A stretch of 64,000 bases of DNA from contig RHPI01000984.1 of the NCBI GenBank assembly GCA_009103225.1, positions 15,551 through 79,550 on the forward strand, read 5' to 3'. Below the pieces are notes generated by a model, which searched no databases, was not told the DNA's origin, and saw nothing but the letters and a program-made list of their open reading frames with translations. Of this stretch, positions 17,503 through 64,000 are shown piece by piece. The translations under genes were made by a program, and so were the position numbers. Source of the stretch: Chlorokybus atmophyticus (taxonomy: Eukaryota > Plantae > Mesostigma and Chlorokybus algae). The number at the start of each line of letters is the position of its first letter. Within the stretch, counting starts at the first letter, position 1.

Positions 17503-17515
17503 AGGGGGGGAGGAG
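17503..17515 (+). promoter_or_regulatory. Polypurine tract AGGGGGGGAGGAG
   Basis: All-purine run immediately before the 3' LTR start TGTAAC. Confidence 0.9.
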
Positions 17516-34400: not shown

Positions 34401-34727
34401 GGTTTCAGTGGTGAGGTCAACGGTGGCACTCTGTTGATTGAAAACATCACCAATGGTGCGCTTTTTCTGTGTTGCTTGCAGGACAGCAACTGAAGCTTCT
34501 TCAACCTTCAAGAAATGAGCACGCACATCTTCTGGTACGGTCATGCATGCAGCCACACCGACACCTATCTTGCCAGTCAGGTGCGCACGAATCCTCGTGA
34601 CACCTCCTTGAAACTTCTTCTTGCAGTAGACACATTCGACCTTGGACTGATTTATTGTCTTGCTGCTTGACTCGCATAACTCTTTGACATGACGCCACTC
34701 ATCTGCTTGTCTCTTGCCCGAGGCCAT
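31486..34727 (-). pseudogene. hAT transposase, 4 exons, with one apparent 1-bp frameshift
   Basis: BED finger (W..CVYC..RIRAHL), TSDGWTD, VVTDSAS, CAAHVLHLLL, PGETRF and C-terminal WW..L..ASSCERNWS. An extra G near 34080 shifts RPLL/NLLQVSPDGAVFL. The intron at 32849-33964 has GT-AG borders. Confidence 0.9.
32860..33915. repeat. About 58-bp CA-rich minisatellite, roughly 16-17 copies, filling a hAT intron
   Basis: Unit GCAGAAAAATGCAGCAAACAC(AC)nATGCA(G/C)CCCTAACACACACATACGCGT. Confidence 0.95.
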
Positions 34728-35605
34728 GTCCTGCAGCAGGACCATTGCCTTGGGCAAAAGACAAGCAGCTAGCAACCGACAACCAACACACCCACACATG
34801 TGAGAGAAGGTTGCATTTGTAACAAGACACGCTAACCTGAAGCGCCTCTCACGCCGCTGACGCCGCCCACGTCTCGCCCCTGCTCCTGCTGCCTGCCCTT
34901 GCCCTGCCGCCGCCGCCGCCAGAACAAAGCAGAGTTGCCGCCAGAACAGACCAGAGGCCTGCTGCACGCGCGAGGGTTTCACAAAAATTTTCTAAGGCAA
35001 AAAACCCTAATAAATACGCCAAATACGCGTACCAAATACTGCTGGCTGTTGGTACGCGTATAATACGGTATCAGAAGTCCTCTGATGCCGTATCGTGCTA
35101 CTATGTGTGGATGGCCCGGTGTATTCGGTCAGTGGTGATGTAGTTGAGCTGCGAGACGGGGACAAAACCAGGTGGGACGAAACGATAAACGATGTTGTGT
35201 ATGCGCGTATCTTAAACACGGACAATGTGCTCAAGGGGGCATTACTTCAGGTGCTGGAGAGTGCGCTGGAGTTCGCACACAGTCTCAAGGACTCCACCGT
35301 GGTGCGGAGCAAGTTCAAATATGCGGCGATGCGGCGCATCATTCGCTGCCGGGAGGTGATCCGAAGTGGAGTGAAGCACTACGTAAGATGACCATCTGGT
35401 TTGCAGCCTCTTTGACTGGCGGACCCACCAGATGTACTTGTAGAGAGAGGTTTTACGTAGCACGAGCTAACCCTTATCATCACTAAATGTTGGCTTGCAT
35501 GTGAGCGTCTCCATGCAACCCAGCTACTCCAACTGCAGTCTTGTCATGTTGTCTCATGTGTGCGCATTCGCATGCAAATACTACCCGTGCAAACGATTGT
35601 GCCAG

Positions 35606-42200: not shown

Positions 42201-45200
42201 CACGCTGCATTGCGGCGTGTCTGTACGCAACACGTGACGCAGCGTGAGTAGACGTTACACTATTGGCTAATACACGTTTTCATATATGTGTTGTTTAGCA
42301 CAATATATGCCACTGATGATGCAATGCTTTGTGTTGAATGATGCATGTGATTGTGCTAACCAATATACGCCTTTTTATAAATATTATGTACAATTTATCA
42401 AGATTTCGTTTCGTTCGGATTATTGTTCATTATTGTTGGTTCGTTTGCTGTCACTCAATGATGTCGCCAAAACAAAGCAAGGTTATATGAACCTTAAACT
42501 TTATGATAACAATATTGTTCAGGTTCTTGTTCTTTGTTCGTGCGGTCATGCCCGAACCTAGGTTCGGCCCCAGCCCTACTGATTAGCACTGATTGATCTA
42601 CTCATTTATCTGATTGATTAAGTATCAACCTGTAGATTATTACAAATCATTACTGTAGGAGGGATTCTGTCAGCAGGACTTCTTAGCGGCGCGTGTGCTG
42701 TGCAGGCACAAAGCCCCGCTCAATCAAGCAGTTTTTCCGGCAACTTTCCGCCACTGTCATCATCATCAGCCTGAAGCTACTCCGACGTGTTTGCGGAGTG
42801 GCATCCACGTGGACATTCAGAGGGGTAGGTTGTTGCCTTGGCTTTGGTGCAGGCGTGAGGCAGAAGGTTGGCGGCATTGTTGGCGTGGTCTGTTGCTGTG
42901 ACGTGCGAAAGCTTGGGGAGGAGGTGGCACATACAAAGGAAGCATAAGGGTTAGGGTGAGGGTAAGGGCGTGATCAGGCTGTCAAGGTCTGGCAGCTAAC
43001 CACGGGGGTGGCTAGCCAGGTCGACCGCCTTGCGGCTGTTGCTGGCTGGCTTTCCGCCTCTGCCTAAGATATGGCGTGGGCGTGCTGTCGCTGTTGAGCT
43101 TGGCTGTTGTTTATGGCGATGGTGACGGTGGGGGCGACGGCACTGCCGGCTGTGTCGTTGGTAAGGCTCGAGGTGTCGGCGTTTTCTTGCGGCGAGAGTC
43201 AATGGCGAGCCGAATTAATTGACAAGCACAAAATTGTGCCAGTCTTGCGTGGTTCTGGCTCTTCCTTTTTTGCAGAGTCGCTGCGGGGAGCTGCCGTCCG
43301 GTCCTCCAGCAGGCCGCACCGCACCTTCACCAAGCGCTAGCTTGCTTCTAAAGCAACCGTCCCTGGAGTAAACCTATCCGACATTGAGCCAACGGAACAG
43401 GTGAGCTCGGTTGAGGTTCTCATTCTGTGGCAGATTCACTTGTGAAACAAGGAGAGCTAGCTAGCTGTACAACTATGCCTGGCTGTGTCTGTTGCGCATC
43501 CGGCAACAACCGGTTGTGACTCTGCCAATTGACCGTTCGCTCATGGTGTTGCTTTTGCAGAGTATCTCCCAGCAAGACTGCCCTTTGTTCTAAGTGCTGC
43601 GGGCCATTGCCATACCCTCGTTTGCTGTCTTCTGTACACCAGCGATTGTTGCGGCAGCTGCTGTTGGAGCTGTTGCCAGCCATATTATGAAAGAAGAGGC
43701 GGCATCTGCTTTCGATGATGCACCTGTTGTGTAAGTTGCTTGCTGATGTGGGATCACCCTCAAAGTGGTGACGAATGGCTGTCACGCGTTGAGTGCTCTG
43801 ATGCATTTGTGCGCGCACAGGCACTACAAGTCAAGGCACAATAAGCAGGATACGGTGCGCAATGCGTTCATGGTCAGTCAATGCGTTGCCTTTGATGCGG
43901 CGTTTGCCGCATCCGTCATGATGCTACACCCTGTGGTCGTCGCTGTTGCGGCCGCTGTTGGGACCGTCACCATGGTGGACTTGCGAAGTATGATCAGCTC
44001 CACGGCAGGGAATGACAGTCACAGCGGGCCAGAACTGGCGGCCATATCCAAATCAGCAGCGTCAGGAGCCCAATCGAACAATCAGGCTGCAGGTGTTCGC
44101 ACATGTACACACCTGCAGACTCACAGCATACCAATGTGTGCATATGTGCTGCATACACGTGCTATATACAGATGCTGTCGTTCTTTGTGTATTCCTTCAA
44201 GACCTGCATTAGTTAGATCTGCTGCGCATAAAAGCAGTCCTTTGTCTTCATTGAATTGCAGTGAGCTCAGTCGGACTGCACACAGTCTACACCAAGTGCA
44301 TTGGCTACATACAAGCATGTAAGCACAGCTTACCAAACAGTATGGCATGCTGTTGCATATGCTGTGCACAAACTTTTTGGCATGCCTTCTAGAACTCAAT
44401 GCTGCACTGCCTTCTTTGTTGTGCACATTGCCTTGTTTACCAAGGTACTGTGCACCACAACGTCAGTGTGCACACTACCTAATTGGCACTGTATTGGTTA
44501 AGTGCGTGTGCCATCATCATGCACACCTGTGAGCCCATGCCATGCCTGCGCCCCGATTACCTGGAGCACCTCATGTTCACTCAACAGCCCACGTGTTGCT
44601 TTGCAGGAACAAGCACAGACACAACAGGTACAACCGCACATAGCAACAATGCTGCCAGCAGCAACAGCAACAGCAACAGCACCGTGTTGGGACGCACTGT
44701 ATACCTATTGCATTGTTAAGCGTGTCCAGAACACGCTCAACAGGTATTGCCATTGCAATTGCCAATTATGCCGTCTCGAGGAGGACCTTACCATCTCTCC
44801 CGCACCCAGACAGGAGTAGCTGGCTTGCGACTGATTGACCGGTCTGTCATCGTAATCCATTCAGGTCAACTGGCTTGCAACACTGCGCGATAAGTACAAT
44901 CTTCAAGTGCTTTTGGACTGGGAACCGCATAAGGACACATTGGAGACTTGAACCAGTAAATATGGGACTGCAGGCTACAAGGTCTGTGCACATGTAACTG
45001 TCATGCTCGTGACCAACCAATACTCAACGCACCAATGCGTGGTGCACGCTAGGCATCACGCAGTTGCTCAGCACAAACACTGCTTGCAAAGGCCCCCCAG
45101 GGGGGGCCCCTGCGATTGCAAGCTTGTTGATACTGTCGTGACTCAGCTAGTGGAACTGCAGGTAGTGGCGGTGGGAAATTTGAATGTGTTGATGTCGTCA

Positions 45201-45418
45201 AGCAAACTGCGGAAGGACATGCAGTTGCGAATGCCGTTGCGCGGCAGTGGCAGCTGCTGACATGTCTGCTGAACCAAATGCACAATCAAGGCAGGTGGCT
45301 CGTACTAATCGTCTTCAAGGTTGGTTCGCTCGCACATACACCCCTTGCTGTCACTGCCATTGGGCGAACAGTTGTTTTCAGACTCAAGGCGTTCAGTGCC
45401 CCGCAATTGTATCATTAA
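39120..45418 (+). repeat. Segmental direct duplication, copy 1
   Basis: Colinear with 49531-55765, about 90-97% identical by eye. Confidence 0.93.
39241..42115 (+). mobile_element. 3' fragment of chromovirus family B (integrase C-terminus, chromodomain, PPT, LTR 40393-42115), copy 1
   Basis: VLxDVLRHY, FAVNNA, KLLPRWLGPF, VHNVFH, frameshifted chromodomain YLVKWLGY, PPT GGGGAGGAA, then TGTCAC..GTCACA. The LTR end is inferred. Confidence 0.8.
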
Positions 45419-49530: not shown

Positions 49531-52500
49531 CAGAGGGTTGGGACACCATGCTACTATGCGACAGGTGTGTTGCCGGTTAGCACATGGAGTGCCTTCGTCC
49601 ACCACTTGAGGAGATCCCTGATGGAGCATGGTACTGTCCGGCGTGTACGAGGACTACGCGATGAGCGTGTGAGTCAGCTGCAGGCGCACGAGGGCGTTGG
49701 CGCTCAGCTGCAGGGGGTGGTGACACGCATCTTTCATATGTGTGTCTACCATATGTCGAGAGATAGTGCGTGAGACAGCATGACATGGTCTCATGGTGTA
49801 CAATAGCATGCGGACATGCATGACAACTTGTAGGTGGTTTACGACGAGTTCATGCCATGATGAGGGAAGGCACGACAGTGCAAACCAGGTGTTGGAAGAC
49901 GTGTTGCGACACTACACTTCACCCAGGTTTAATGACAGGCATTTGCACCTGGCATTAGCTTGGTTTGCGGTGAACAATGCATGGCAAGGATCACTGCATA
50001 GCACTCCGTTCTGTTTGAACTATGTTAGGCATCATGTGACGCCTATGTCTCTGCAAGTTCAGCCGTTTTGCAAAGTGCCTACAGCTAGAGACTTGACAGA
50101 GCAGATACACGGTGCATTGGCTAGTGCCAAAGTCTGCCTGAGAGCAGCTCAAGATCGGCATAAGATGTATGCTGATCGGCAGCGCAGCCCTGGAGAGGGT
50201 TTGAAGGTTGGGGACAAGGTCTTGTTCAGCACCAGAAACATTGGGCTCAAAACTAGTGGTGTACGTAAGCTCCTGCCCAGGTGGCTTGGGCCGTTCACTG
50301 TCTCTGCAGCTGTGGGAACACGAGCCTTTAGGCTTGAATTGCCAAAGAGCATGCGTGTCCACAATGTGTTTCATGAGGCGCTGCTCAAACCATACAAGAG
50401 TAATGGTAGAATGCAGCCACCTCCACCTCCTGTTGAGGTGGAGGGCGACCTTGAGTATGAGATCGGAAGCCATTGTTGGCAAGCGGTTCGGGAGATTTAT
50501 CAAGGGCTTCCAAACAGAGTACCTTGTAAAGTGGCTGGGTTATGATGAAGAGCATAACCTCTGAGAGCCAAATTTTAACTTGGAAAACTGTACTGCTAAG
50601 TTGGAAGAGTTTAAGAGTGAGCTCGAATCCACAGGTGCCACTTGAAGGAGCTTGTGCTCTGGAGCTTGTGCTCAGTTGTAATGTGCAACATTTCTTCTGT
50701 GACATGCCAACATGCGCGCACTGTTACTTAGTATTTTAGTTGGTTGTCACTCCCGTGGCTTGCACATGTTCTACGCGTAGTGTGCGATGATTCAGAAGGG
50801 TTGGCCACCCTTGCTGGCAATTGTCGTGCGGGGCTTGTGCTCCATCAGTTTGCAACGTGGAAGTTGCAAGGCAAGTGGGGAGGAATGTCACGCCCAAAGG
50901 ACTGGCTTAAGTCACTCTCAATTTCTTACTTATGTGGTAAGTAAGAAGGACTAAATGAGGATCTCGTATAGTCATGGTGAATGTAGCACCTGGCATACGT
51001 GCTCATGAAGTCAGTTCTATGCACTTGGTGTATGAGGACCTAGCTACTACATAAGGCATTGTCTACCAGTAAATACAGGACTGGTCAGTGTCAAACAGAG
51101 TCGCTAAGGCACCAAGGGTGTTGCTTGTGTTGATGTGTCCGAGGGTGGACAGAGTCAGCCTGTGCTGACAGGTCAGCGCATAGGTGGCGAGGTTGTGTTG
51201 GCCTCGGATATTCTATGTGTCTGGTCGGAGAGCAGCGGGTAGTATTAAGGCATGGCTACCATCTTGTGATGGTAAGGGGGAGTTACTGGCCTTGCAAGAC
51301 TACTCGTTCGTAGGGTGCCTGGCTGAAGCTTTTGAAGGGTGCTCTCCCATCTACTCCCTTGTGGGTTGTTGCTGGTAGCAAGGTGTGTGGTAAAGTACAG
51401 CTGCTTGTGCAGAAGTTTGTGACCCTCTCAGCAGGTAAGTTGAGAGGTCAATGTTGTGACACATGTGGACTATGTGGTTCATATGGACTTATCGCTTATC
51501 AAGCTGTGTAGTGCTTAGCAGGTTGAACCACACGGACACGTCCTTGCCTCCTTAGATCGCTCGGACATAGTAGTACACAAGGCATTAATATGTGGTAGCA
51601 CATAGCTGATTACTGTCTACCCTGGCCATGTGAGCCTTGTATCATGATGTCACACCACCGTGTAACAATGATTGCCAATCATGGTGACCCTGAGACAGTT
51701 GTGAGCTGTTAATCGTGGTTCACGTTTGTTTGACGATGTCTGCCATTGCGTGTCCGCTACACACAGTAGTAAGCTGCTAATGGCATATCGTGTCACACAG
51801 TGTCCTGTGTGGGACATTCCGAATAAGCCTAGGTACCCCAATCCTGTGATGGGACAAGTCCAATGTTGGACTTGTTAGCTCAAGAACAGTACCCTGTATA
51901 TATTGATGTTTCCGCGATAATCTCATTGATACTCCCGAGGTGGAGTTTAACGATCCCTATGTAGGGAATTGTCATGTGTATAGGTTAGCGCACAATGACA
52001 AGGCCTTGTTGGCCTTAGACATTGTGTATCAGGTCGGAGAGCAACAAGTGAAGTATATAAGCTTGTGTAAGCTGACGATTTGCATCATCATGTGAGGTGC
52101 CCTACGAGAACTAACTTGTGTGGGGGGTGCCTGCTTTGGAGCTGTTAGAGGGGCTCTCCCTCACATCCCTTGTGGGGTGTGATGTTGTGTATGTGTGCGC
52201 CACCTTAGGTGCATGTGTGTGTCTGGGATTGGAGCTGAGTGGAGGGGCGTGTGGTCATCCTCTTCCTCCTTGGTGCGGAGCTGCTGGGCTGCTCCCGTGG
52301 TGTCTTGCCGTTGTACCAAGTGGTACTTAGCACACAAGTTGTGTTGCTAGACTTCCTCCTAGCTGGAGTTGTAAGTCCTTTGTTTTGTGCATAAGTGTGC
52401 GGTGGCTACTAGCAAGTAAGTGAGTAGAAATGTCATAATCGCCAGAACGTTCTTTGTTCGTTCTCTATGCATGACGCATATAGGGAATGAGCCTTTTGCA

Positions 52501-55500
52501 GTCACGCAATATTACGCACAGTCACGCTGCATTGCGGCGTGACTGTATGCAACACGTGACGCAGCGTGACTAGACGTCACACTATTAGCTAATACACGGT
52601 TTCATATATGTGTTGTTTACCATAATATATGCCACTGATGATGCAATGCTTCGTGTCAAATGATGCATGTGATTGTGCTAATCAATATACGCCTTTTGAT
52701 GAATTTTATGTACAATCAATCAAAGATTTTATTCGAATTTTTGTTCAATATTGTTGATTCGTTCGATGTCACTCATTAATGTCGCTTGCTTTGTGTTGTG
52801 TGTGTATGTGCTGTGTTCTGCAAAAACAAAGCAAGGTTATATGAACCTTAAACTTAATGATAACAATATTGTTCAGGTTCTTGTTCTTTGTTCGTGCGGT
52901 CATGCCCGAACCTAGGTTCGGCCAGCCCTACTGATTAGCACTGATTGATCTACTCATTTATCTGATTGATTAGATATCAACCTGTAGATTACAACAAATC
53001 AATACTGTATGAGGGACCGTCAGCAGGACTTTCTAGCGGCGCGTGTGCTGTGGAGGCACAAAGCCCCGCTCAATCAAGCGGTTCTTCCGGCAACTTTCCG
53101 CCACTGTCATCATCATCAGCCTGAAGCTACTCCGACGTGTTTGCGGAGTGGCATCCACGTGGACATTCAGAGGGGTAGGTTGTTGCCTTGGCGTTGGTGC
53201 AGGCGTGAGGCAGCAGGGTGGCGGCATTGTTGGCGTGGTCTGTTGCTGTGACGTGCGAAAGCTTGGGGAGGAGGTGGCACATACAAAGGAAGCATAAGGG
53301 TTAGGGTGAGGGTAATTGCGCGATCAGGCTGTCAAGGTCTGGCAGCTAACCACGGGTGGCTAGCCAGGTCGACCGCCTTGCGGCTGTTGCTGGCTGGCTT
53401 TCCGCCTCTGCCTAAGATATGGCGTGGGCGTGCTGTCGCTGTTGAGCTTGGCTGTTGTTTATGGCGATGGTGACGGTGGGGGCGACGGCACTGCCGGCTG
53501 TGTCGTTGGTAAGGCTCGAGGTGTCGGCGTTTTCTTGCGGCGAGCGTCAATGGCGGGCCGAATTCTTCGACAAGCACAAAATTGTGCCAGTCTTGCGTGG
53601 TTCTGGCTCTTCCTTTTTTGGAGAGTCGCTGCGGGGAGCTGCCGTCCGGTCCTCCAGCAGGCCGCACCGCACCTTCACCAAGCGCTAGCTTGCTTCTAAA
53701 GCAACCGTCCCTGGAGTAAACCTATCCGACATTGAGCCAACGGAACAGGTGAGCTCGGTTGAGGTTCTCATTCTGTGGCAGATTCATTTGTGAAACAAGG
53801 AGAGCTAGCTAGCTGTACAACTATGCCTGGCTGTGTCTGTTGCGCATCCGGCAACAACCGGTTGTGACTCTGCCAATGGACCGTTCGCTCATGGTGTTGC
53901 TTTTGCAGAGTATATCCCAGCAAGACTGCCCTTTGTTCAATGTGCTGCGGGCCATTGCCATACCCTCGTTTGCTGTCTTCTGTACACCAGCGATTGTTGC
54001 GGCAGCTGCTGTTGGAGCTGTTGCCAGCCTCATTATGAAAGAAGAGGCGGCAGCTGCTTTCGATGATGCACCTGTTGTGTAAGTTGCTTGCTGATGTGGG
54101 ATCACCCTCAAAGTGGTGACGAATGGCTGTCACGCGTTGAGTGCTCTGATGCATTTGTGCGCGCACAGGCACTACAAGTCAAGGCACAATAAGCAGGATA
54201 CGGTGCGCAATGCGTTCATGGTCAGTCAATGCGTTGCCTTTGATGCGGCGTTTGCCGCATCCGTCATGATGCTACACCCTGTGGTCGTCGCTGTTGCGGC
54301 CGCTGTTGGGACCGTCACCATGGTGGACTTGCGATGTATAATCAGCTCCACGGCAGGGAATGACAGTCACAGCGGGCCAGAACTGGCGGCCATATCCAAA
54401 GCAGCGTCAGGAGCCCAATCGAACAATCAGGCTGCAGGTGTTTGCACATGTACACACCTGCAGACTCACAGCATACCAATGTGTGCATATTGCTGCATAC
54501 ACGTGCTATATACAGATGCTGTCGTTCTTTGTGTATTCCTTCAAGACATGCATTAGTTAGATCTGCTACGCATAAAAGCAGTCCTTTGTCTTCATTGAAC
54601 CGCAGTGAGCTCAGTCGGACTGCACACAATCTACACCAAGTGCATTGGCTACATACAAGCATGTAAGCACAGCTTACCAAACAGTATGGCATGCTGTTGC
54701 ATATGCTGTGCACAAACTTTTTGGCATGTCTTCTAGAACTCAATGCTGCACTGCCTTTTTTGTTGTGCACATTGCCTTGTTTACCAAGGTACTGTGCACC
54801 ACAACGTCAGTGCGCACACTACCTAATTGGCACTGTATTGGTTAAGTGCGTGTGCCAGCATCATGCACACCTGTGAGCCCATGCCATGCCTGCGCCCCGA
54901 TTACCTGGAGCACCTCATGTTCACTCAATAGCCCACGTGTTGCTTTGCAGAAACTAGCACAGACACAACAGGTACAACCGCACATAGCAACAATGCTGCC
55001 AGCAGCAACAGCAACAGCAACAGCACCGTGTTGGGACGCACTGTATACCTATCGCATTGTTAAGCGTGTCCAGAACACGCTCAACAGGTATTGCCATTGC
55101 AATTGCCAATTATGCCGTCTCGAGGAGGACCTTACCATCTCTCCCGCACCCAGACAGGAGTAGCTGGCTTGCGACTGATTGACCGGTCTGTCATCGTAAT
55201 CCATTCAAGTCAACTGGCTTGCAACACTGCGCGATAAGTACAATCTTCAAGTGCTTTTGGACTGGGAACCGCATAAGGACACATTGGAGACTTGAACCAG
55301 TAAATATGGGACTGCAGGCTACAAGATCTTTGCACCTGTAACTGTCATGCTCGTGACCAACCAATACTCAACGCACCAATGCGTGGTGCACGCTAGGCAT
55401 CACGCAGTTGCTCAGCACAAACACTGCTTGCAAAGGCCCCCCAGGGGGGGCCCCTGCGATTGCAAGCTTGTTGATACTGTCGTGACTCAGCTAGTGGAAC

Positions 55501-55765
55501 TGCAGGTAGTGGTGGTGGGAAATTTGAATGTGTTGATGTCGTCAAGCAAACTGCGGAAGGACATGCAGTTGCGAATGCCGTTGCGCGGCAGTGGCAGCTG
55601 CTGACATGTCTGCTGAACCAAATGCACAATCAAGGCAGGTGGCTCGTACTAATCGTCTTCTTGGTTCTTGGTTCGCTCGCACATACACCCCTTGCTGTCA
55701 CTGCCATTGGGCAAACAGTTGTTTTCAGACTCAAGGCGTTCAGTGCCCCGCAATTGTATCATTAA
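49531..55765 (+). repeat. Segmental direct duplication, copy 2 (ends at an assembly gap)
   Basis: Colinear with 39120-45418. Stops at the n at 55766. Confidence 0.93.
49721..52437 (+). mobile_element. 3' fragment of chromovirus family B, copy 2 (LTR 50886-52437)
   Basis: Same motifs as copy 1 and the same chromodomain frameshift. Confidence 0.8.
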
Positions 55766-55766
55766 N
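55766..55766. other. Assembly gap (n)
   Basis: Literal n base. Confidence 0.95.
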
Positions 55767-55922
55767 GACGCAATCACACACATGCAAATATATGCGGATC
55801 TTGAGTCTGAGCACATCCAGCAACCACATTAACACACACACACACACACACACACGCATTATTTACGCTGGACAAGTTGGAGTACACTTTGTTACGAGAT
55901 GAGAGCAAAGCACTGCAACTCA

Positions 55923-57865
55923 TCACTTTGATTCGATGGCATCCATTTCGTCCAATGCGCGCTGTGTTGACGACGGCGGAGCAGTCTTGTTATGTTTCTC
56001 GTACTGCAGCTCCAAGAACGTGTAGTACTCTGGCCGATTGTCTGCCTCAAGGTAATGTCGATTGCCAACAGGCCACTGCTTCCACAGCTCGAGCCGATAG
56101 TAGTTGGCAATGTCAATTGGCTCGACCATCAGCCGGAAAGTGTTGCCTCTTGCACACCAGACATTGGACTTGCTGAATAAGTCAGGAGGCAACATGCCAT
56201 CCATGTACCATTTATATGCTGAACGCCAGAAGTCCCGCAGAACCCTGTCATGTCATGTCTTGTTGGTGCGGAGGTCATATCAGCACTGAGCCATCAGGTG
56301 AAGGCCTAATATTGCAATGCATCATATTTTGTCTGACCTGCGTGCTCGCTCGACTCTTTTCAGGGGCCCTTCTTGCGGGCTGTCATCGCTAGCGCGGTAT
56401 GCTCTGAAATCCGCGTAGTAGTCTGGCGAGGTCTGCATGAAGGCTTGTATTGTGTCCATGGCGTCTTGCACCTCATTGCGCCACTTGTCAGTAAGCTCTG
56501 TCTCATTTTTCCGCAGCTCGGGAACGCTAAGCACGCCCACTCGCGGTGACTCGGAAGCGCTGCAAAGTCAAAGGAACTCAGACTACGTGCGTTATGTGGT
56601 AAGCCAACACATGCAAACCAGGCCGCAATGCGAACCTAAGTTGTGATGGCATAGGCTGCATGAAGGCCGGTACAATGCCCAAGTGATTCACGAGGGTGTT
56701 ATACCCAACCCAGGGTTCCTGTTGCATCAAGATGGAAACAATAAACCACTCTGATTGCTGATGCGCAGTTGTCAAGCAATGCAAGGTGACTGTGCGCATG
56801 TTGCAAGCGCATGTCTCCCAAACAGAAGTGTACAGCTTGGAGCAAATGCAACACACACTCTCTTTTGTGAACTTGCCTGCTGATCGCCAAGGGTGAAGTA
56901 GCTAAACTTCCTAATCCCGTCGGGTACATGCTTTCTAACTCCGGGCGGTTTGAAGATGACCGGAACCAACCAGCCGAAGCGATTCTGCTCCTCGTAAACC
57001 TTGTTCGCTATGTTGGTGTACTCGTCGTGCGTTCCCGCTCCCATCTTGTCATCCTCGGTTGGTACTTTCAGTGAAAACCGTTCGTAATGCTCATCACAGG
57101 CAACAATCACCTGAAAGGTCAAATGCACAACACACAACACACACTTGTCAAGGCGCCCCCTCTAAACATTCACAAGTGAAGTGCAAGTCAGTACAATCGC
57201 TCTTGTTTCCCAAGCATACAAGTTCAGTTGTGTACATAACGCACACACGAGTACGCGCACGCACAGTGTGTACTGATGCGGTGGGTATAGGAAACTTCTA
57301 AACAGTACAAGCGGCACAATGTCTGGAGGTTGTGCGTTCAAGTGCATTGTATGTATCCAGATGATTGACAAGTGACAATTGACAACCACTTTAGGACAAG
57401 CGATGGGCGCCTAGAGCAAGCATGGGTTGCATTGCAGAATTGCATCTGTAAAATCTTGAGGTGATGAAACTCGGATTTGACTGTCTGCTTGACACTTGGG
57501 CTGCCATGCCACGCGCATGCAGGCAAGTGCATGAGTGTGCGTGCAAGTGCTGTGGTGTACAATGGGTGTGTGCGTAGACGTACCAGAAGAGCCAGCAGTG
57601 AATCAGGGTGCAGCGGCGTGCATGCACGAGAAAGCAACAAAGATTGGGGAGAAGGCAAAGGTGAAAAGGGGGCGAGAAGACAAAGGCTAGTAGAGTGGAA
57701 GAATGAACGAGAGAGAGATGGCAAGACGGCAGGTTGACGGCTGCTACTTACCAAGGAAAACAGCAGTAGCTGTTGCTAATCACCCCGCCTCAAACCACTG
57801 CCTCCGCCTCATGCGCCGTCGCCGCCAAATCTTGTCGCGCTGCCGGTGACAATGATCATCGGCTT
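55923..57865 (-). CDS. EDS1/PAD4/SAG101-family lipase-like + EP-domain protein; C-terminal exons intact, N-terminal lipase part disrupted or unresolved
   Basis: Exons 57110-56877, 56718-56636, 56559-56338 and 56244-55923 splice in phase (GC-AG, GT-AG, GT-AG) into 286 aa. The product contains DYYADF, RVLRDFW..LPPD..W..FRLMVEPIDIANYY..HYLEADNRPEYY. Upstream lipase-3-like pieces are KPMIIVTG (57865-57842), LATATAVFL, RCxxxxxP, DIVP (57323) and THDEY. Confidence 0.85.
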
Positions 57866-58349
57866 GTCCTTGTGGGCGGGGGCGGCGGCAGCGTTGTGGT
57901 CGTCGCCGTGGGATGAAGTAGGCGTCATTCTTGCCACCTGGCCAGTGGGCATACCACCACCGCTGCAGCATAGGTTGGCACTCACTCCGCCGCTTCTGAT
58001 GCTCTCATGGTCACACTTGCATGCACCCAGCGGTCTGATCAGGTTTGTGTGATTAAGAAGACATGTTCATGGGGCGGGTGATTGCACAAATGGGCGTGTG
58101 GGGTGAGTGTATTGAGAATATGTCATCGCGTGCAAGTCTGCGAGTATCAACGAATAGAAGTGTGTGCGAGTGTCAGTGCGAGAGAGAGTACATGTCTGTG
58201 ACTGTGTGGCTGAAGAGCATATGCATGTGGAATTGTATGTGGGGGACTGCATGTGTAGATGAATGGTGCGCTCAAGTTTGATCGATGCAGTGGATGTGTA
58301 TACGTTTAGTTGTAGGATGCAGCGTTTTTTCAACACATGCATAATGCAC

Positions 58350-59860
58350 GGGTGTCATGCTGTTGGCCTTCCGCTGCAACACCAGATCCGCATGCAGCTG
58401 ACAGCATCCCTGAAAATTGTACCATGCTCAGTGTTGTAATTGCGAGTGTAGCCTGTCTCAGCAATGTACCCAATTTGCTTGCTCGCATGGATGCAGCATG
58501 CTTAGGAAGCCACCCAACCACCATTTTCTTGACAGGGCAGCGCGGAGAGAGCCGCAGTGATACACGACGCAATAATACATAATTTGCAGCATCCACCATC
58601 GACTGCAACAGCGCTTCTCGGCGCTGTCTCGTCCGCTCGAAACGCTTGTTATTTATTTCATTTCTTCGCTGGGCACACTGCCTGCACCAAGAGGACAGGC
58701 TAGTGCGCATAGCCTCGCCTAGCAGCGACTATATAGTCAGCCAATGATGCATGGCTTGTCACATAGCCTTACCCAACTAGGATAGCTGTGCGGCAAATGG
58801 TTGGTTGGTTGCCTATGACAGGGGGCGATGTGGTTGCACATGCACGATTGCATGGGTAGAGACTTGCCATCATGTATAGTGTACGACTGCAGAGTACAAG
58901 TGTAGAGTACAAGTGTTGCTAGACAATAATACACACGTCATTTGGATGGCAGTATGTATGCCTTCATATGAAGAGGATGGGACATCCTGGTCCACCCTGC
59001 TTCGGGTGTAAGTGAGTCAACCGAAATTGTACATGTGATAAATCAGAAGCCAGCTGGCGCCCTACCCGTGCAGTCAAATCTCTGTCAGGAAGGCAGGCTC
59101 CAGAGAAAGAGGCCTCTTTACAAACGCTGCCATTGTGCGCTGACCAATGTCTGTGGAGCAGTGGTCGAAATACACCTCATCCAACAAGCACTCTATCCTC
59201 GCCAACACTGTTGGGCTCGAATTACTCCACGAACCAGCACTTGCGGATGTTGGTATGCCATCCGAAGGTACATCTGCGAAAGGTGGTCCGGGGGGGCGAT
59301 ACTCTGACTGGTCTTGTGGGTGAGTGCGCCATGCTTACCAGCAGGCAGATCCCATCGGGTAACAAGCACTGTTGGGTAGTCGCACTAAGGGTGTTGCAAC
59401 GAGCGGAATTAATCGACCAACTCGTTGTAGTTTCATACTATAACCAGCCCGGCATGTTAGTCAATCCATGCGCAATCTTTGACACAACGTATTCGAGCAC
59501 GATCAGCATAGCATGCATCATTGCAAGTGCCGTCAACCTGACATAACTCTCCATACCCTCTTCGCCTAGTGTGCTTTGATATGAGCAGACAGAATGGCAA
59601 CAGGCACATATTTGCCGTACTTACAGGTGCCGTAAATAATAACAATCAGGCATGGTAGGCGCCTATTACTCCTGTCTGTCTGAAAGGGCGTTCACCTCGT
59701 CGTACATGCTCTGCCTTTGCGCCAGTGTCGGGTTGGCAAAAGCTGTCGCTTTGTCGAAGCCAATGAGCCCCAGCTTTGCTTTAGAACTCGCCAGCGCCCA
59801 TCGATGCAGGACTGTGGCCTTGCCGTAGTCGTGATCTAAGTCAATAGCAACTGCTATGCA
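58350..59860 (-). other. Unassigned exon-like segments between the TNL and the EDS1-like gene
   Basis: Frames AVAIDLDHDYGKATVLHRWAL..DRQE, LTALAMMHAMLIVLEYVV and RNEINNKRFERTRQRREALLQSMVDAANY have plausible splice sites. No family recognised. Confidence 0.35.
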
Positions 59861-60644
59861 AATCTCAAAAGCGTAGCAAACATGACGAGCATTGGCGATG
59901 CTGCAAAATGTGTTCGCCTCTGCGCAGATTGCTCTGCTCCTTGCAGCGTGGGAAGGCTACACAGTCCTCGACCACCCATTGGTGACCTGATCGTGGAGAT
60001 GCGACTGCCATTGTAGTCAGAGCACCAACCCTTGCCACCGGTGGTGTATTCAGCGATTGGGTGGGTCCCATGACAAATAGCCATCACAGCCAGTACACCA
60101 GCAGCAGGTGCTCAACACCATAACCATCGCCTGCAGTGTCAGCAACATGTGTAGGTCGGTGTCTTAGAGTGGGTGTGCTTGCGTTGAGTGTTGTTTGTGA
60201 ATCTTGATGTGCATGCAGGTATTCAAGTCAGCATGCATACTCGTACGTGTAGGTCGACCTACCAAAGTGGCTGCGTGCGTGAGCGCGTGTCAGCCTTGTT
60301 GGAGAAGGTATGTGCACATGCGCGTGCTTGCATTGGTCTGCGTACGCATGTGCATGCTGGTTCCTGTGCCATAACGCACAAGTTTCCAGTCAGTCTGTAA
60401 GACGTGTGTTGCTGTAAGCATATGTGTGTACACAAATGTGAGCAACTGTGCAAAATGAGCATGTGTGTGCGGCCGCTCTTACCCTGGTAAGGTGAGGGGC
60501 AACCATACCCTGCAGCGCCGATTGCCTCACCCGCCTACATACTTTGCGCACATACCAGCGAGCACATACGGATTCTGGCAAGGCCGCCCAATCGCTGTAC
60601 TTGCTGCCGTCCTGCTCCTGCAGTGCTGCGATTGCACTGATATA

Positions 60645-63600
60645 TCAATAAATAGCTGACATTGAAGCAGACTTGCTTCCGTCCTCCTCCTCTTCCGCCG
60701 CCTCCCGCTGGTGCTGCTGCAGCACAGCCACAACAGCAGGAGCCAACCTACTGACAGATTCCGGCAGCAATGTCAAGTCTTCGCACCCGGTTAGGTCCAA
60801 CTGTTGCAGAGCAGCGAGGTTGCCGAAGGACTCCGGCAGCGATGCTAAGCTGATGCACCCGGTTAGGTCCAACTGTTGCAGAGCAGCGAGGTTTCCAAAG
60901 GACTCCGGCAGCGACGGCATGCCTACGCACGAGTTCAGGTCCAACCATTGCAGAGCAGCGAGGTTGCTGAAGGACTCCGGCAGCAACCCCAAGCTGTGGC
61001 AGGAGTTCAGGTTTAACCATTGCAGAGCAGCGAGGTTGCCAAAAGACTCCGGCAGCAACGCCAAGTTGACGCACGCGCGTAGGTCCAATCTTTGCAGAGC
61101 AGCGAGGTTGCTGAAGGACTCCGGCAGCAACCCCAAGCTGTGGCAGGAGTTTAGGTTCAACCATTGCAGAGCAGCGAGGTTGCCAAAAGACTCCGGCAGC
61201 AACGCCAAGTTGACGCACCCGCTTAGGTCCAATTTTTGCAGAGCAGCAAGGTTGCCGAAGGACTCCGGCAGCGACGCCAAGCTTACGCACACCCGCAGGT
61301 CCAACCCTTGCAGCGCAGCGAGGTTGCCGAAGGACTCTGGCAGCAACGCCAAGCTGTCGCAAAATTTCAGGTCCAGCTCCTGCAGAGCAGCGAGCTTGCC
61401 GAAGGACTCCGGCAGCGACGCCAAGCTGTCGCAAATTTCCAGGTCCAACCCTTGCAGAGCAGCGAGCTTGCCAAAAGACTCCGGCAGTGACGCCAAGCTG
61501 TCGCAAAAATTCAGGTCCAACCATTGCATAGCAGCGAGCTTGCCAAAGGACTCCGGCAACGCCGCCAAGCTTTTGCACCCACTCAGGTCCAGCACTTGCA
61601 GCTCAGCGAGTTCACCAAAGGATTCCGGCAGCGCCGCCAAGCTTTCGCACCCACTCAGGTCCAGCACTTGCAACTCAGAGAGTTCACCAAAGGAGTCTGG
61701 CAACGCCGCCAAGCTTTCGCACCCACTCAGGTCCAGCACTTGCAACTCAGAGAGTTCACCAAAGGAGTCTGGCAACGCCGCCAAGCTTGTGCACTTACTC
61801 AGGTCTAGCACTTGCAACTCGGCGAGTTTGCTGACAGACTCGGGGAGCATGCTCAAACGCCATGCAGTGAGATGCAGAGCCTGTAGCCTAGTAAGCTCGC
61901 CAAGCACAGGCACCTCCTTTAGAACTAGACGGTTCTGTCTGTAATTGCCAGTGGGGTAAACCCGCAGCTCCAGGACTTGCAGCTCCTTGAGGTTTCCTAA
62001 GAACTCAGTCCGCAGCCTTTTGACATTGAATCTGGTGATGGTTACATGTACGATGAGGACGACCAATGTTGTGTGTGCAGCGCGGCATTGCATAAGAAAT
62101 TGTTCAAGGCTGAACAGCTCGCACTTTTCCACTCCAGATATACCAGGTCTTTAAAAACCCACTTGGTCACGAAAAATGCTTTTCTGATTGGTTGCACGAA
62201 AGAGTCGCACGCAGTAGTTGCACGCAAGAGTCGCACGCAGCAGCCTTCTTTCTTCCTTGTTTCTCTTTGTTGTTGGCACGCAAGAGTGTGAGTGTAAACT
62301 TCGCCATCCCAATCAATCGTGCCAAGGTCCAGCATGTGGAGGCGGGGCATGAAGGCCATGCCTCGCAATGGTGGGCTCCTATTGACACCAGTCCAGGACA
62401 TAGTCTCGGCGTTGTCAAAGCCCTGCATGCAACAACAATGCAATGAACAGCAATACACACGTGTTCACTCCACCAGTGTGTTGTAACACACTCCTAGAAC
62501 ACCGTGGATTGCAAGTTCTCATTGGATGCATGCAAGCAATCCTTGACAGGCCAGTAGAACGGGACATGAGGTGAAGGAACCATGACGGAACGTGGGCATT
62601 GCAAGCACCTTCATGGACTTGGCGCTCAATGCCATTGGCGACCAGATGTGCCTGGGCGGGTTGGCACAATTGGCAATCATTCGCCCCATGTCCCGAAGTT
62701 GGTCATGCACCGAAAGGAATTTACTTTTGCCATAACGCAGATTAAAATAACGCAACTTGAACATTCGGTGATGTTCGGACAAATCATCCAGGGCTCCACT
62801 TAAGCGAACGAGGGACCATTCCACCAGGCAATTCAGCGCATCTGACCCGCCCCACGCTGGAAGCAGCATGTCCTTGCTCTTCCCCAACGCAAAGCAGCAG
62901 ATATCCAAAAACACTTGCTGCGTCTCGGGTTGTAGGTAGTCGTAGCTGAGCTTGAGCTTGTCCCAGAGCTTGTTGTCAGCTGTACCTGCCACTGCGGTTG
63001 CCTGCTGCAGTCGCCACAGTGCGTCTTTCCAAGCCTGCACATCACCCTTTCTGCGCGTGTGGAGAAAGGAGCCCACGACCTCCAGTGCAAGCGGCAGGCC
63101 CTCACAAGCCTTAATGATATCTTGAACAATGGTCTCCAGATCTGCAGGCACTACTTGCGATCTGAAGGCATGTTGACAGAACAGTTCTCTAGGGTACTGA
63201 CCGTCAAGCGGACCAACGTCCTCCACCAACATATGCTTCTCATGCCCCTTGATTAAGTTGCAACTACGAGAGGTCACCAGCACACGACTGCCGGTACCAA
63301 GCAGAGGGCTGGCGTCCTCCAAACCGAAAGGACCAAGCAGGGCTGCTTCTTGATCATTACTCCAAATGTCATCAACAACGAGCAGCACCTTCTGCCCTTG
63401 CAAGCGTGCCTTGAGAGTTGCCTTTCCTTCAGCAATGGAGTTGAATTTATAACTAGAGTTGGGACCACTCCCAAGCTGTTCAAGCATCTGCTGTTGCAGC
63501 TGTACCAGCCTCCCATTATCTTGACATGGTTCGTTTCCGACCTCTAGAAAGCAGCAGCTGCCAGCAAATGTGCTGCGCAGCTTGTTGTAGATTGCCATTG

Positions 63601-63979
63601 CCAGCGTAGTCTTCCCAATGCCACCCATGCCCCATAGCCCTAGTAAGACGACCTTGCTTCCTCTGGTAGCAGCACTCAACTTCTCGAGTACAGCTTTAAC
63701 GCGGCGATCGATGTCCACCGGGTTTGCGGCAACATCCAAAGGTGGGCGGTCCAACGTTTCCAGCACGTCGTCCACCACTTTCTTGGCTAAACAAACCGGG
63801 TCACTGACAAACAATAGCAACCATCAGGAAACCGCACATGACAACCTTAGTGGAGATGTTTCCCAGTGACACCTTACCCATTCTCAAGCCTCAGGCCCGT
63901 TTTTCCAAATGCTTCTGCGAGCGCATCACGGTATGCAGACTCATTCTGGATATATCGCTGCTGGCCACTCAGGCATGCG
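60645..63979 (-). CDS. TIR(tail)-NB-ARC-LRR (TNL-type) immune receptor, 5'-truncated by the window edge, with one apparent 2-bp frameshift
   Basis: Exons 63979-63878, 63803-62609 and 62422-60645. Motifs: P-loop GMGGIGKTT, kinase-2 VLLVVDDIW, GSRVLVTSR, GLPLAL, RNBS-D FLDICCF, VHDQLRDMGR. TIR-like C-terminal helices YRDALAEA..G..L.NGD..LAKKVVDDVL. 16 LP(E/D)S LRR units. Confidence 0.9.
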
Positions 63980-64000
63980 CTGAAAGCACAAAACGTGTTT

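What the first reader, a model, noticed from the sequence alone, without database searches (positions are those of the whole stretch)
55923..64000. TNL receptor and EDS1-like gene are co-oriented neighbours: candidate ancestral TIR-NLR/EDS1 signalling locus
Seen: the TNL (63979-60645) and the lipase-EP gene (57865-55923) lie on the same strand, about 2.8 kb apart, with no gap between them. Established: in seed plants, TIR domains of TNLs make nucleotide signals that bind EDS1-PAD4/SAG101 EP-domain pockets and activate ADR1/NRG1 helper NLRs; those genes are not normally clustered with TNLs. Inference: physical linkage here could reflect a compact receptor-plus-transducer immune module.
Basis: partly seen in the sequence, partly recalled or inferred. 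Interest (0 to 1): 0.85.

Follow-up and report, generated by a model that had tools for sequence, protein, structure and literature searches.

The report
Algal TNL beside lipase-less EP gene
In the early-branching green alga Chlorokybus, a TIR-type immune receptor gene lies just upstream of an expressed gene that carries the EP "signal-catching" domain of the plant immune hub EDS1 but no lipase half. The same receptor-next-to-EP arrangement recurs in other algal DNA, so the roots of the EDS1 pathway can be tested outside seed plants.

Summary
The window is Chlorokybus DNA. On the minus strand lie a TNL-type NLR and, downstream, an expressed, spliced EP-domain gene.

- **NLR:** it has a TIR last helix at the window edge, NB-ARC (4e-30) and 16 LRR motifs.
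- **EP domain:** Pfam EDS1_EP scores 3e-11. The AlphaFold model of a paralog 90% identical over the EP exon matches only EDS1/PAD4/SAG101 among its top PDB hits.
- **No lipase:** the RNA-supported ORF is 264 aa. It holds the back half of a bacterial-type SEFIR domain plus a short EP.

The two genes look like separate transcripts. A paralog gene model (P0123) joins LRR, SEFIR and EP in one protein and shares the window's LRR tail. This locus is therefore best read as a split, partly decayed copy of a TNL-SEFIR-EP module. The TNL also carries an apparent 2-nt frameshift.

The linkage is not chance. Seven of the 9 carry a true lipase-like+EP gene, including the chlorophyte Elliptochloris.

The functional link from TIR to EP is inferred, and the EDS1 R493 equivalent is Tyr here. 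The scan had already noted SEFIR-EP and TNL-SEFIR-EP genes on other pieces of this genome.

The parts
63878..64000 (-). End of the TIR exon of the NLR (partial; the gene runs off the window). Only the last TIR helix and the start of the linker are present.
   Evidence: The frame reads ...YRDALAEAFGKTGLRLENG and ends at a GTAAGG donor. It aligns to positions 143 onward (helix alphaE region) of an HMM built from 20 angiosperm TIR-NB proteins. Pfam alone gives no hit.
63804..63877 (-). Predicted 74-nt intron between the TIR and NB-ARC exons
   Evidence: GT donor and pyrimidine-tract/CAG acceptor. Splicing restores one frame. Not checked with reads.
62519..63803 (-). NB-ARC exon with TNL-type motifs: GMGGIGKTT, KVLLVVDD, GSRVLVTSR, GLPLAL, FLDICCF, VHD
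   Evidence: Pfam NB-ARC 4.3e-30. The nearest named relatives are angiosperm TIR-NBS-LRR proteins at 31-34% identity. Profile alignment scores 276 bits.
62085..62098 (-). Apparent 2-nt frameshift in a CA-rich run. It lies between the frame coming from the NB-ARC side (…FLCNAA) and the LRR ORF frame (…LVVLIV).
   Evidence: Paralog P0123 reads FLCNAAACQNLVVLIV in one frame. The window needs two frames, with 14 nt where 12 are expected. This could be a real lesion or an assembly error.
60645..62132 (-). LRR ORF of the NLR: 16 LPES[FV] motifs, RPS4B-like LRRs, stop codon at 60645-60647
   Evidence: Pfam LRR_14 9e-58 and LRR_13 (RPS4B-like) 4e-23. Motif count. An RNA contig runs unspliced from 60821 to 60482 across the stop.
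59812..60644 (-). Transcribed region 3' of the NLR stop, with two spliced introns (60364-60482 and 60131-60262). No recognisable coding sequence.
   Evidence: CT..AC joints in RNA contigs of runs X1 and X2. Translation of the spliced form gives nothing recognisable.
57974..58535 (+). Intron of a plus-strand spliced transcript lying between the two genes, antisense to the first exon of the EP gene
   Evidence: The joint 57971>58534 is canonical only as GT..AG on the plus strand. The spliced form has no long or recognisable ORF.
57752..57971 (-). Exon A of the EP gene. It is non-coding for the EP frame, with in-frame stops at 57778 and upstream. Its 5' limit is not determined.
   Evidence: Minus-strand intron 57111-57751 (CT..AC) is supported in X1 and X2. 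Translation.
56877..57110 (-). Exon B1: back half of a SEFIR/TIR_2-like domain (VIVACDEHYERF…GWLVPVIFKPPG…). The first in-frame ATG is at 57044.
   Evidence: 84% identical to residues 122-204 of paralog P0122, whose full domain scores Pfam SEFIR 3e-10 and PADLOC bSEFIR 3.6e-21. The front half of the domain was not found between 57113 and 60600.
56636..56718 (-). Exon B2 (linker), flanked by GC-AG intron 56719-56876 and intron 56560-56635
   Evidence: Loose ends and joints in the RNA contigs. Matches P0122 residues 207-245.
56338..56559 (-). Exon C: first helices of the EP domain
   Evidence: Joints at 56559>56636 and 56243>56337 in X1, X2 and X3. Pfam EDS1_EP on P0121 covers residues 99-222.
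55923..56244 (-). Exon D: EP core (W.ARG..FRLMVEPIDIANYYR…HYLEADNRP) plus stop codon 55923-55925. The 3' UTR reaches at least 55867.
   Evidence: Pfam EDS1_EP 2.8e-9. phmmer against PDB: PAD4 4.6e-5, OsEDS1 5.5e-4. Conserved family motif. RNA contig 55867-56046.
55766..55766 (.). Single N where a 6-kb duplicated block ends (39241-45418 is similar to 49722-55765). Possible scaffold join about 160 bp 3' of the EP stop.

Best explanation
This is an immune-gene locus of the streptophyte alga Chlorokybus. A TNL-type NLR gene is followed on the same strand by a separately transcribed, truncated member of an algal SEFIR-EP family.

The EP gene makes a spliced mRNA. Its open frame of 264 aa from the first ATG holds the back half of a bacterial-type SEFIR domain, a linker, and a short EDS1-type EP helical bundle. 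It has no lipase domain.

The pair most likely descends by duplication from a TNL-SEFIR-EP module of the kind kept in one gene model at a paralogous locus (P0123). In this copy the LRR-to-SEFIR junction and the front half of SEFIR have been replaced by about 3.5 kb of other transcribed sequence. The TNL may also be frameshifted.

Inferred mechanism for the module as a whole: TIR or SEFIR domains make NAD-derived nucleotides on activation. The EP bundle is the receiver that binds them or relays the activated state. Producer and receiver are kept together by fusion or adjacency, as in bacterial producer-sensor defence pairs.

Shown: domain identities, splicing, expression, paralog architecture, and recurrent TIR-EP linkage across loci. 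Inferred: common descent from a fused module, and any ligand or signalling role.
For: **Organism and EP identity**
- The EP exon is 100% identical to Chlorokybus atmophyticus P0121.
- Pfam EDS1_EP scores 3e-11 on P0121.
- The AlphaFold2 model of paralog P0122 (90% identical over the EP exon) has pLDDT 90-98 over the EP part.
- Its top 22 Foldseek PDB hits are all EDS1, PAD4 or SAG101, with E from 7e-6 upward and rmsd 2.3-5.0 A.
- AFDB cluster hits are dominated by EDS1-family or EP-named proteins.

**Gene structure**
- RNA contigs from three runs give four minus-strand introns in the EP gene.

**Family architectures in Chlorokybus**
- P0122 is SEFIR-EP, P0123 is LRR-SEFIR-EP, P0124 is EP-TIR-...-EP, and P0134, P0146 and P0162 carry EP.
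- The window's LRR tail (PAVVAVLQQHQREA…) is homologous to the LRR-SEFIR linker of P0123.
- The window's LRRs are 53-59% identical to those of P0123.

**Separate transcripts**
- The stop at 60645 lies inside an unspliced RNA contig.
- Exon A has in-frame stops.
- A plus-strand GT..AG intron lies between the two genes.

**Linkage elsewhere**
- L001, L003-L008 and L010 have TIR ORFs 0.5-5 kb from the EP or lipase-EP gene.
- EP identity between lineages is 27-65%.

**Literature**
- Every EDS1-independent TIR named in preprint 10.64898/2026.05.20.726525 is from moss or Ginkgo. By elimination, the tested Chlorokybus TIR-eYFP fusion caused EDS1-dependent cell death in Nicotiana benthamiana.
Against: - This copy lacks the front half of SEFIR.
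- Its frame has no ATG until inside the SEFIR remnant.
- The TNL shows an apparent frameshift. The locus may therefore be decaying rather than working.
- The residue equivalent to EDS1 R493 (PAD4 R420; PMC6377607) is Tyr in this EP, although it is Arg in 34 of 72 family members.
- By my counting from that alignment, the positions of H476 and K478 are Leu.
- The algal EP covers only about Pfam positions 16-122 of 211, or AtEDS1 residues 366-504. An EDS1-like ligand pocket is therefore not evident.
- The fused paralog is a gene model that I could not check on DNA.
- Logan contigs are short and unstranded, so read-through from the TNL into the EP gene is not excluded.
- Elliptochloris has no TIR gene within 10 kb of its lipase-EP gene.
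Confidence: 0.6

Rival explanations
1. Chance neighbours. The window is a TE-rich immune-gene cluster in which NLR, SEFIR and EP genes pile up through duplication. On this view the adjacency of this TNL and this EP gene has no functional meaning.
For: The window holds Ty3/gypsy elements, a hAT-like ORF, a 6-kb segmental duplication, a second LRR fragment and a separate SEFIR-like gene. The two genes appear to be separate transcripts, with an antisense RNA between them.
Against: Of 9 independent EP loci from other organisms, 8 also have a TIR ORF within about 6 kb, in varied orientations and with varied NTPase/repeat types. Within Chlorokybus, EP is fused to SEFIR, TIR or LRR in three gene models. 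The window's LRR tail matches the fusion linker of P0123.
Confidence: 0.15
2. Dead locus. Both genes are decaying duplicates: a frameshifted TNL and a 5'-truncated SEFIR-EP. Their transcription is residual, and neither has a role in signalling.
For: There is an apparent frameshift at about 62085-62098. The front half of SEFIR is missing, and in-frame stops lie upstream of the EP frame. The NLR 3' UTR has two introns, which would be expected to trigger nonsense-mediated decay.
Against: The 495-codon LRR ORF and the 294-codon EP frame are both still open. The EP exon keeps all nearly invariant family residues and is 85-90% identical to its paralogs. All four EP-gene introns are correctly spliced, and contig depth is high in run X1. 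The frameshift may be an assembly error.
Confidence: 0.2
3. One gene. The TNL, the half-SEFIR and the EP domain are exons of a single long transcript that encodes an NLR with an integrated C-terminal EP domain, as in the P0123 model.
For: The two genes share a strand. RNA contig coverage is nearly continuous from 60821 to 58534 and from 57971 to 55867. The paralog model fuses LRR, SEFIR and EP.
Against: The stop codon at 60645 lies within an unspliced RNA contig. The frames downstream hold many stops. The only intron between 57974 and 58535 is on the plus strand. Exon A carries stops in the EP frame. No joint links the LRR exon to exon A or B1.
Confidence: 0.08
4. One reading: a true EDS1-like lipase-EP gene next to a TNL.
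For: The EP domain is genuine. Lipase-like+EP genes do exist in other algae.
Against: No Lipase_3 signal appears anywhere between 55900 and 60600, whether by Pfam or by tblastn with seed-plant or algal lipase parts. The exon upstream of EP encodes SEFIR sequence. The proposed N-terminal ORF is not in frame with EP after RNA-supported splicing.
Confidence: 0.03

Closest known systems
EDS1 / PAD4 / SAG101 family of seed plants (lipase-like domain + EP domain; PDB 4NFU, 7XEY, 7XJP, 8ZF0)
   Same: The EP helical bundle has the signature W..RG..YR.LVEP.DIANYYR…HYL…NRP. Sequence matches to PAD4 and EDS1 are significant, and these proteins are the only strong structural matches.
   Different: There is no lipase-like domain; a SEFIR remnant stands in its place. 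The EP is short, covering about AtEDS1 366-504 and lacking the last ~120 residues. The R493 equivalent is Tyr. The host is a streptophyte alga, whereas the family is described as arising in seed plants (10.1101/572826; 10.64898/2026.05.20.726525).
Plant TIR-NB-ARC-LRR receptors (TNLs such as RPP1, ROQ1, RPS4, N)
   Same: NB-ARC with TNL-type motifs, a TNL-type TIR-NB linker, and RPS4B-like LRRs. The nearest named relatives are angiosperm TNLs.
   Different: The TIR core is not in the window. No C-JID/post-LRR domain was detected. There is an apparent frameshift. In a paralog, the LRR is followed by SEFIR-EP.
Bacterial SEFIR defence proteins (PADLOC bSEFIR; BcSEFIR, PDB 5Y8E/5Y8F)
   Same: The SEFIR domain of paralog P0122 scores bSEFIR 3.6e-21 and gives a weak BcSEFIR hit. 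The window keeps the back half of this domain.
   Different: It is fused to an EP domain in a eukaryote. The EP part does not match the C-terminal region of bSEFIR. The window copy is truncated.
Bacterial producer-sensor defence pairs (Thoeris ThsB TIR + ThsA; CBASS). This is a functional analogy only.
   Same: A TIR-type signal producer and a putative signal receiver are kept in the same locus or the same polypeptide. The TIR of P0124 matches ThsB models.
   Different: The locus is eukaryotic, intron-bearing and not an operon. The receiver fold (EP) is unrelated to SLOG or SAVED. No signalling molecule has been shown.
Algal lipase-like+EP genes found here (Elliptochloris bilobata L002; environmental contigs L003-L008)
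   Same: The EP core is 43-61% identical to the window's (34% for L007). All but L002 sit beside TIR-NTPase-repeat genes.
   Different: They keep a class-3 lipase-like domain with GHSLGG and EDS1-like blocks (CITFGAPLVGD…, …PFGTYL…) and have no SEFIR.

Membership tests
EDS1/PAD4/SAG101 family | EP domain sequence (Pfam PF18117 above the gathering score) | tested here: met
   37.4 bits on the last exon and 43.8 bits on P0121, against a cut-off of 23.1. phmmer against PDB gives PAD4 4.6e-5 and OsEDS1 5.5e-4.
EDS1/PAD4/SAG101 family | EP alpha-helical bundle fold | tested here: met
   Tested on paralog P0122, which is 90% identical over the EP exon. pLDDT is 90-98. The top 22 PDB matches are all EDS1, PAD4 or SAG101, with probability 1.00.
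EDS1/PAD4/SAG101 family | N-terminal class-3 lipase-like alpha/beta-hydrolase domain in the same protein | tested here: not met
   No Lipase_3 hit by Pfam. No tblastn hit with seed-plant EDS1-family proteins or with algal lipase exons. The upstream exon encodes SEFIR.
EDS1/PAD4/SAG101 family | Full-length EP domain (about 240 aa; Pfam model of 211 positions) | tested here: not met
   Only model positions about 16-122 are matched. The structural alignment covers AtEDS1 366-504 of 623.
EDS1/PAD4/SAG101 family | Positively charged cavity residues needed for signalling (EDS1 R493, K478; PMC6377607) | tested here: not met
   PAD4 R420, the stated equivalent of EDS1 R493, aligns to Tyr in NRPEYY. 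The family column has Arg in 34 of 72 sequences and Tyr in 4. My placement of H476 and K478 (both Leu here) comes from counting positions in that alignment and is less certain.
EDS1/PAD4/SAG101 family | Heterodimer formation, and binding of pRib-AMP/ADP or ADPr-ATP | not testable with these tools
   Needs biochemistry.
TNL (TIR-NB-ARC-LRR) | NB-ARC with P-loop, RNBS, GLPL and MHD motifs | tested here: met
   Pfam 4.3e-30. 276-bit alignment to a TIR-NB profile, with GMGGIGKTT, GLPLAL, FLDICCF and VHD.
TNL (TIR-NB-ARC-LRR) | C-terminal LRR domain | tested here: met
   LRR_14 9e-58 and LRR_13 (RPS4B-like) 4e-23.
TNL (TIR-NB-ARC-LRR) | N-terminal TIR domain with catalytic Glu | tested here: inconclusive
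   Only the last helix lies in the window. It aligns to the TIR C-terminus of the profile, but Pfam gives no hit. The core lies beyond position 64000.
TNL (TIR-NB-ARC-LRR) | One uninterrupted reading frame | tested here: inconclusive
   There is an apparent 2-nt frameshift at about 62085-62098 relative to paralog P0123. It was not checked with reads.
SEFIR domain proteins (bacterial type) | Complete SEFIR domain | tested here: not met
   The window holds only the equivalent of P0122 residues 122-204. The front half is absent and Pfam gives no hit on the remnant. Paralog P0122 has the complete domain: Pfam 3e-10 and bSEFIR 3.6e-21.

The most novel reading that the evidence does not exclude
The EP domain is an old, pre-land-plant receiver module for TIR- or SEFIR-made signals. 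Across green algae it has been kept physically coupled, by fusion or adjacency, to TIR-STAND receptors. The lipase-like+EP (EDS1) architecture already existed in algae rather than arising in seed plants. The window would be one somewhat eroded instance of this ancestral TIR-to-EP wiring.
Probability: 0.4. Interest if true: 0.9.

Novelty: new variant of a known kind. Interest (0 to 1): 0.72.

Why it matters
How TIR domains signal in plants that are said to lack EDS1 is an open question (10.64898/2026.05.20.726525). This locus and its relatives show three things:
- EDS1-type EP domains exist in a streptophyte alga.
- There they are joined to SEFIR, TIR or NLR modules instead of a lipase.
- EP genes sit beside TIR-NTPase-repeat genes in several other algal sequences, and several of those EP genes are true lipase-like+EP genes.

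This gives concrete protein pairs to test for production and perception of TIR-derived nucleotides outside seed plants. It also gives algal outgroup sequences with which to root the EDS1/PAD4/SAG101 tree.

Tried and rejected
- **Paralog DNA:** The look-up of encoding contigs on P0123 returned "not on record", so the fused paralog could not be checked on DNA.
- **Long TNL-EP proteins:** The search for homologous proteins with the EP region of the 2011-aa Arabis protein found only Brassicaceae and other seed-plant models.
- **Named algal EP proteins:** the same tool with Elliptochloris P0125 returned only the query itself.
- **ESM Atlas:** a search with P0140 gave no usable lead.
- **Pfam on small pieces:** the 41-aa TIR remnant and the SEFIR remnant gave no hits.
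- **Organism identity of environmental contigs:** a PDB search with a gamma-tubulin exon of L006 at E 1e-20 found nothing. Paper searches for the assembly and run accessions were blank except for Elliptochloris.
- **EP related to the C-terminal region of bacterial bSEFIR:** rejected. The EP part alone gives no PADLOC hit, and the SEFIR part alone gives 69 of the 74 bits.
- **Coding exons between the genes:** translation of the spliced 3' region of the NLR and of the plus-strand transcript gave nothing recognisable.

Full report
**What the window is.** The sequence is eukaryotic and intron-bearing, with about 50% GC. An exhaustive HMMER search with the EP exon (55926-56252, minus strand) found P0121, a 233-aa protein that is 100% identical. 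Its source name is Chlorokybus atmophyticus jgi/Chlat1/3722/Chrsp258S03871. The next hits are Chlorokybus paralogs: P0122 (90%), P0123 (85%) and P0124 (51%). Seed-plant EDS1-family proteins appear only at E of about 1e-4. The genome is therefore a streptophyte alga, not a seed plant.

**The NLR.**
- The minus-strand ORF 62519-63820 is an NB-ARC domain (4.3e-30). ORF 60645-62132 is a long LRR domain (LRR_14 9e-58; RPS4B-like LRR_13 4e-23) with 16 LPES[FV] motifs.
- The nearest named relatives of the NB-ARC are angiosperm TIR-NBS-LRR proteins at 31-34% identity. Unnamed environmental ORFs reach about 40%.
- Only about 40 codons upstream of the NB-ARC exon are in the window, and Pfam sees nothing in them.
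- They end at a GTAAGG donor, and a pyrimidine tract plus CAG acceptor lies 74 nt downstream. With that intron removed, about 25 of these residues plus the linker and NB-ARC align collinearly. They match an HMM I built from 20 angiosperm TIR-NB proteins, starting in the last TIR helix (…W/YRDAL.EA…G…). The score is 276 bits.
- "TNL" is therefore probable, but the TIR core and catalytic Glu are outside the window.
- One caution concerns the frame. Paralog P0123 reads FLCNAAACQNLVVLIV in one frame. The window needs two frames there, with 14 nt in a CA-rich run where 12 are expected, at about 62085-62098. This is either a real frameshift or an assembly error. I could not check it with reads.

**The EP gene.** The last exon matches Pfam EDS1_EP (2.8e-9). 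P0121 matches PAD4 (4.6e-5), rice EDS1 (5.5e-4) and SAG101 in a sequence search of the PDB.
- I aligned 79 relatives and modelled paralog P0122. The EP part has pLDDT 90-98. Its top 22 Foldseek matches in the PDB are all EDS1, PAD4 or SAG101 chains, with E from 7e-6 upward, 152-175 aligned columns and rmsd 2.3-5.0 A. AlphaFold DB cluster hits are likewise dominated by EDS1-family or EP-named proteins, with AtEDS1 aligned over residues 366-504.
- The family signature W-L-x-R-G-x-x-Y-R-x-L-V-E-P-x-D-I-A-N-Y-Y-R … H-Y-L … N-R-P is strongly conserved.
- The domain is short, covering Pfam positions about 16-122 of 211.
- PAD4 R420 is given as the equivalent of EDS1 R493 in PMC6377607. It aligns to Tyr in the window's NRPEYY. 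That column is Arg in 34 of 72 family members.

**No lipase.**
- No piece between 55900 and 60600 matches Lipase_3.
- tblastn with Ginkgo and other seed-plant EDS1-family proteins hits only the EP exon.
- tblastn with algal lipase exons hits nothing in the window.
- Instead, 56865-57113 is 84% identical to residues 122-204 of P0122. That is the back half of a domain scoring Pfam SEFIR 3e-10, TIR_2 3e-9 and PADLOC bSEFIR 3.6e-21.
- The front half (…KLTVFISY…SWPAFIGQ…) was not found anywhere between the two genes.

**Transcripts.** I laid Logan contigs of four RNA runs of the same organism on 55800-61799, within the 6,000-letter limit; three of the four runs had contigs that laid on it.
- Minus-strand introns of the EP gene are 57111-57751, 56719-56876 (GC-AG), 56560-56635 and 56245-56337.
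- The spliced mRNA has an open frame starting after a stop at 57778. It reads QQLLLFSL|VIVACDEHYERF… through to …ESK*. The first ATG is at 57044, which gives 264 aa.
- The JGI model P0121 differs in detail, because it skips part of exon B1 and all of exon B2.
- The NLR transcript runs unspliced across its stop at 60645. It then has two spliced introns (60364-60482 and 60131-60262) in sequence with no recognisable coding content.
- Between the genes, the only joint (57971>58534) is canonical solely as a plus-strand GT..AG intron. A plus-strand, apparently non-coding RNA therefore lies there.
- No joint links the LRR exon to the EP gene. Two transcription units are the likelier reading, but the contigs are short and unstranded.

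**Why the two genes are neighbours.**
- P0123 (680 aa, Chrsp114) is a single gene model containing LRRs, a linker, SEFIR/TIR_2 and EP.
- Its N-terminus maps to the window's segment between NB-ARC and LRR. Its LRRs are 53-59% identical to the window's. Its LRR-to-SEFIR linker begins with the same PAVVAVLQQHQ(Q/R)EA tail that ends the window's NLR.
- Other Chlorokybus EP proteins are SEFIR-EP (P0122) and EP-TIR-…-EP (P0124). P0124 has the WxxKEL catalytic-Glu motif by eye and matches Thoeris ThsB models. P0134, P0146 and P0162 carry EP alone or with unassigned regions.
- The simplest account is that this locus is a duplicated TNL-SEFIR-EP module. In this copy the junction and the front half of SEFIR were lost to about 3.5 kb of other sequence.
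- I could not fetch the paralog DNA, so this account is an inference.

**Is linkage more than chance?** I fetched every non-Chlorokybus EP hit that sat on a contig of about 10 kb or more.
- L001 (GCA_030012885.1): an EP ORF with a TIR ORF (2e-17) 4 kb away.
- L002 (Elliptochloris bilobata): no TIR within 10 kb.
- L003 and L006 (two contigs of ERZ26858887) and L005: TIR_2-nSTAND3-TPR genes lie head-to-head with, or flank, the EP gene.
- L004: TIR_2 ORFs on both sides and a 906-aa TPR ORF.
- L007: TIR plus NB-ARC (2e-25) head-to-head with the EP gene.
- L008: a TIR…LRR gene convergent with the EP gene, ending 0.2-0.8 kb from it.
- L010: TIR, NB-ARC/WHD_ROQ1 and EP all on one strand.

The Chlorokybus P0124 TIR finds a TIR in all eight of these loci. 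EP identity between lineages is 27-65%, and L003, L005 and L006 form one lineage. That makes 8 of 9 loci, or 6 of 7 lineages.
- Some TIR_2 hits on exon-sized ORFs fall just under Pfam's cut-off (25-28 bits).
- No genome-wide background could be computed here.
- If TIR genes occur about once per several hundred kb (my assumption, not measured here), this frequency is far above chance.

**A by-product.** In L002-L008 the EP exon is preceded on the same strand by exons of a class-3 lipase-like domain.
- These exons carry GHSLGG and blocks very like EDS1/PAD4: CITFGAPLVGD…VVWRHDMVPRILL and …PFGTYLLHT…LVC.
- In Elliptochloris the annotation splits this into a 213-aa gene and a 142-aa "EDS1 EP domain-containing protein".
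- The literature I could read describes the family as arising in seed plants, with only "short EP-like sequences" reported in green algae.

**Function.** Nothing here shows function.
- The preprint names only two moss TIRs and one Ginkgo TIR as EDS1-independent. By elimination, the Chlorokybus TIR-eYFP fusion it tested caused EDS1-dependent cell death in Nicotiana. That fits, but does not show, the production of EDS1-perceived signals.
- The inferred mechanism is that TIR or SEFIR is the producer and EP the receiver, held together by fusion or adjacency. It rests on guilt by association.
- The non-conserved cavity residue, the short EP, and the degenerate state of this particular copy all weigh against it.

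**Earlier notes of this scan.** On other pieces of this genome the scan already describes SEFIR-EP genes, an EP-TIR fusion, a TNL-SEFIR-EP gene and a truncated SEFIR-EP gene. I used these as leads. My independent checks here agree with them, as far as protein models and this window allow.

**Verdict.** It is a TNL-type NLR next to a truncated, lipase-less SEFIR-EP gene. Its mechanistic reading remains untested.

Noticed in passing
L002:6801-10625 (+), Elliptochloris bilobata JALJOU010000074.1: Lipase-like exons lie on the same strand as, and just upstream of, the annotated 142-aa 'EDS1 EP domain-containing protein'. They carry GHSLGGAVAI, CITFG…VVWRHDVVPRALL and …FGMFLLHTDGGSIVCD. Together they look like one lipase-like+EP gene (EDS1 architecture) in a chlorophyte that the annotation splits into two genes.
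   Followed up: partly
L003:6541-10560 and 17500-20020 (+); L004, L005, L006, L007, L008: Environmental eukaryotic contigs carry lipase-like+EP genes, in tandem in L003. These are flanked by TIR_2-nSTAND3-TPR, TIR-NB-ARC or TIR…LRR genes. The organisms were not identified. The nearest named relative of the lipase-EP genes is Elliptochloris.
   Followed up: partly
L010:3034-7643 (+): TIR (4e-10), NB-ARC/WHD_ROQ1 and EP (6e-7) ORFs lie on one strand with no lipase. This may be a single TIR-NB-…-EP gene, similar to the Chlorokybus arrangement, in another organism.
   Followed up: no
L001:1712-6975 (GCA_030012885.1, JASCQV010002970.1): An intron-less 243-aa EP ORF lies 4 kb from an intron-less TIR ORF, and a CBM_14 ORF is nearby. 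The organism is unknown and there is no lipase.
   Followed up: no
P0180, P0206, P0207, P0210 (Arabis, Eutrema, Brassica napus): Brassicaceae gene models combine Lipase_3 and EDS1_EP with TIR, NB-ARC and LRR in one protein of 1400-2100 aa. An association between TNL and EDS1-family genes, or annotation merges of adjacent genes, therefore also occurs in seed plants.
   Followed up: no
window:39241-45418 and 49722-55765: A 6-kb direct duplication (90-98% identity) includes a Ty3-type integrase part. The second copy stops exactly at the single N at 55766, which suggests a scaffold join or rearrangement breakpoint just 3' of the EP gene.
   Followed up: partly
window:45493-46116 (+): A separate, apparently complete SEFIR/TIR-like gene (…VFLSYC…, …FEVVIDQIKPYSMAWAQFIAQGFAEGTKV…). 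It is 36% identical to the P0122 SEFIR over 42 residues and has no EP behind it.
   Followed up: partly
window:57560-59700 (+): A plus-strand spliced RNA (intron 57974-58535) with high contig depth and no recognisable ORF. It lies antisense to the first exon of the EP gene and converges on the NLR 3' end.
   Followed up: partly
window:28-960 (+): A second NLR-type LRR ORF at the window start, about 56% identical to the P0123 LRRs and cut by the window edge. No SEFIR or EP lies behind it.
   Followed up: no
window:2805-8568, 14862-18183, 34056-34982: Two Ty3/gypsy-like elements (RVT_1, RNase H, integrase SH3, chromodomain) and a BED/DUF659 hAT-like ORF. The immune genes sit in TE-rich DNA.
   Followed up: no
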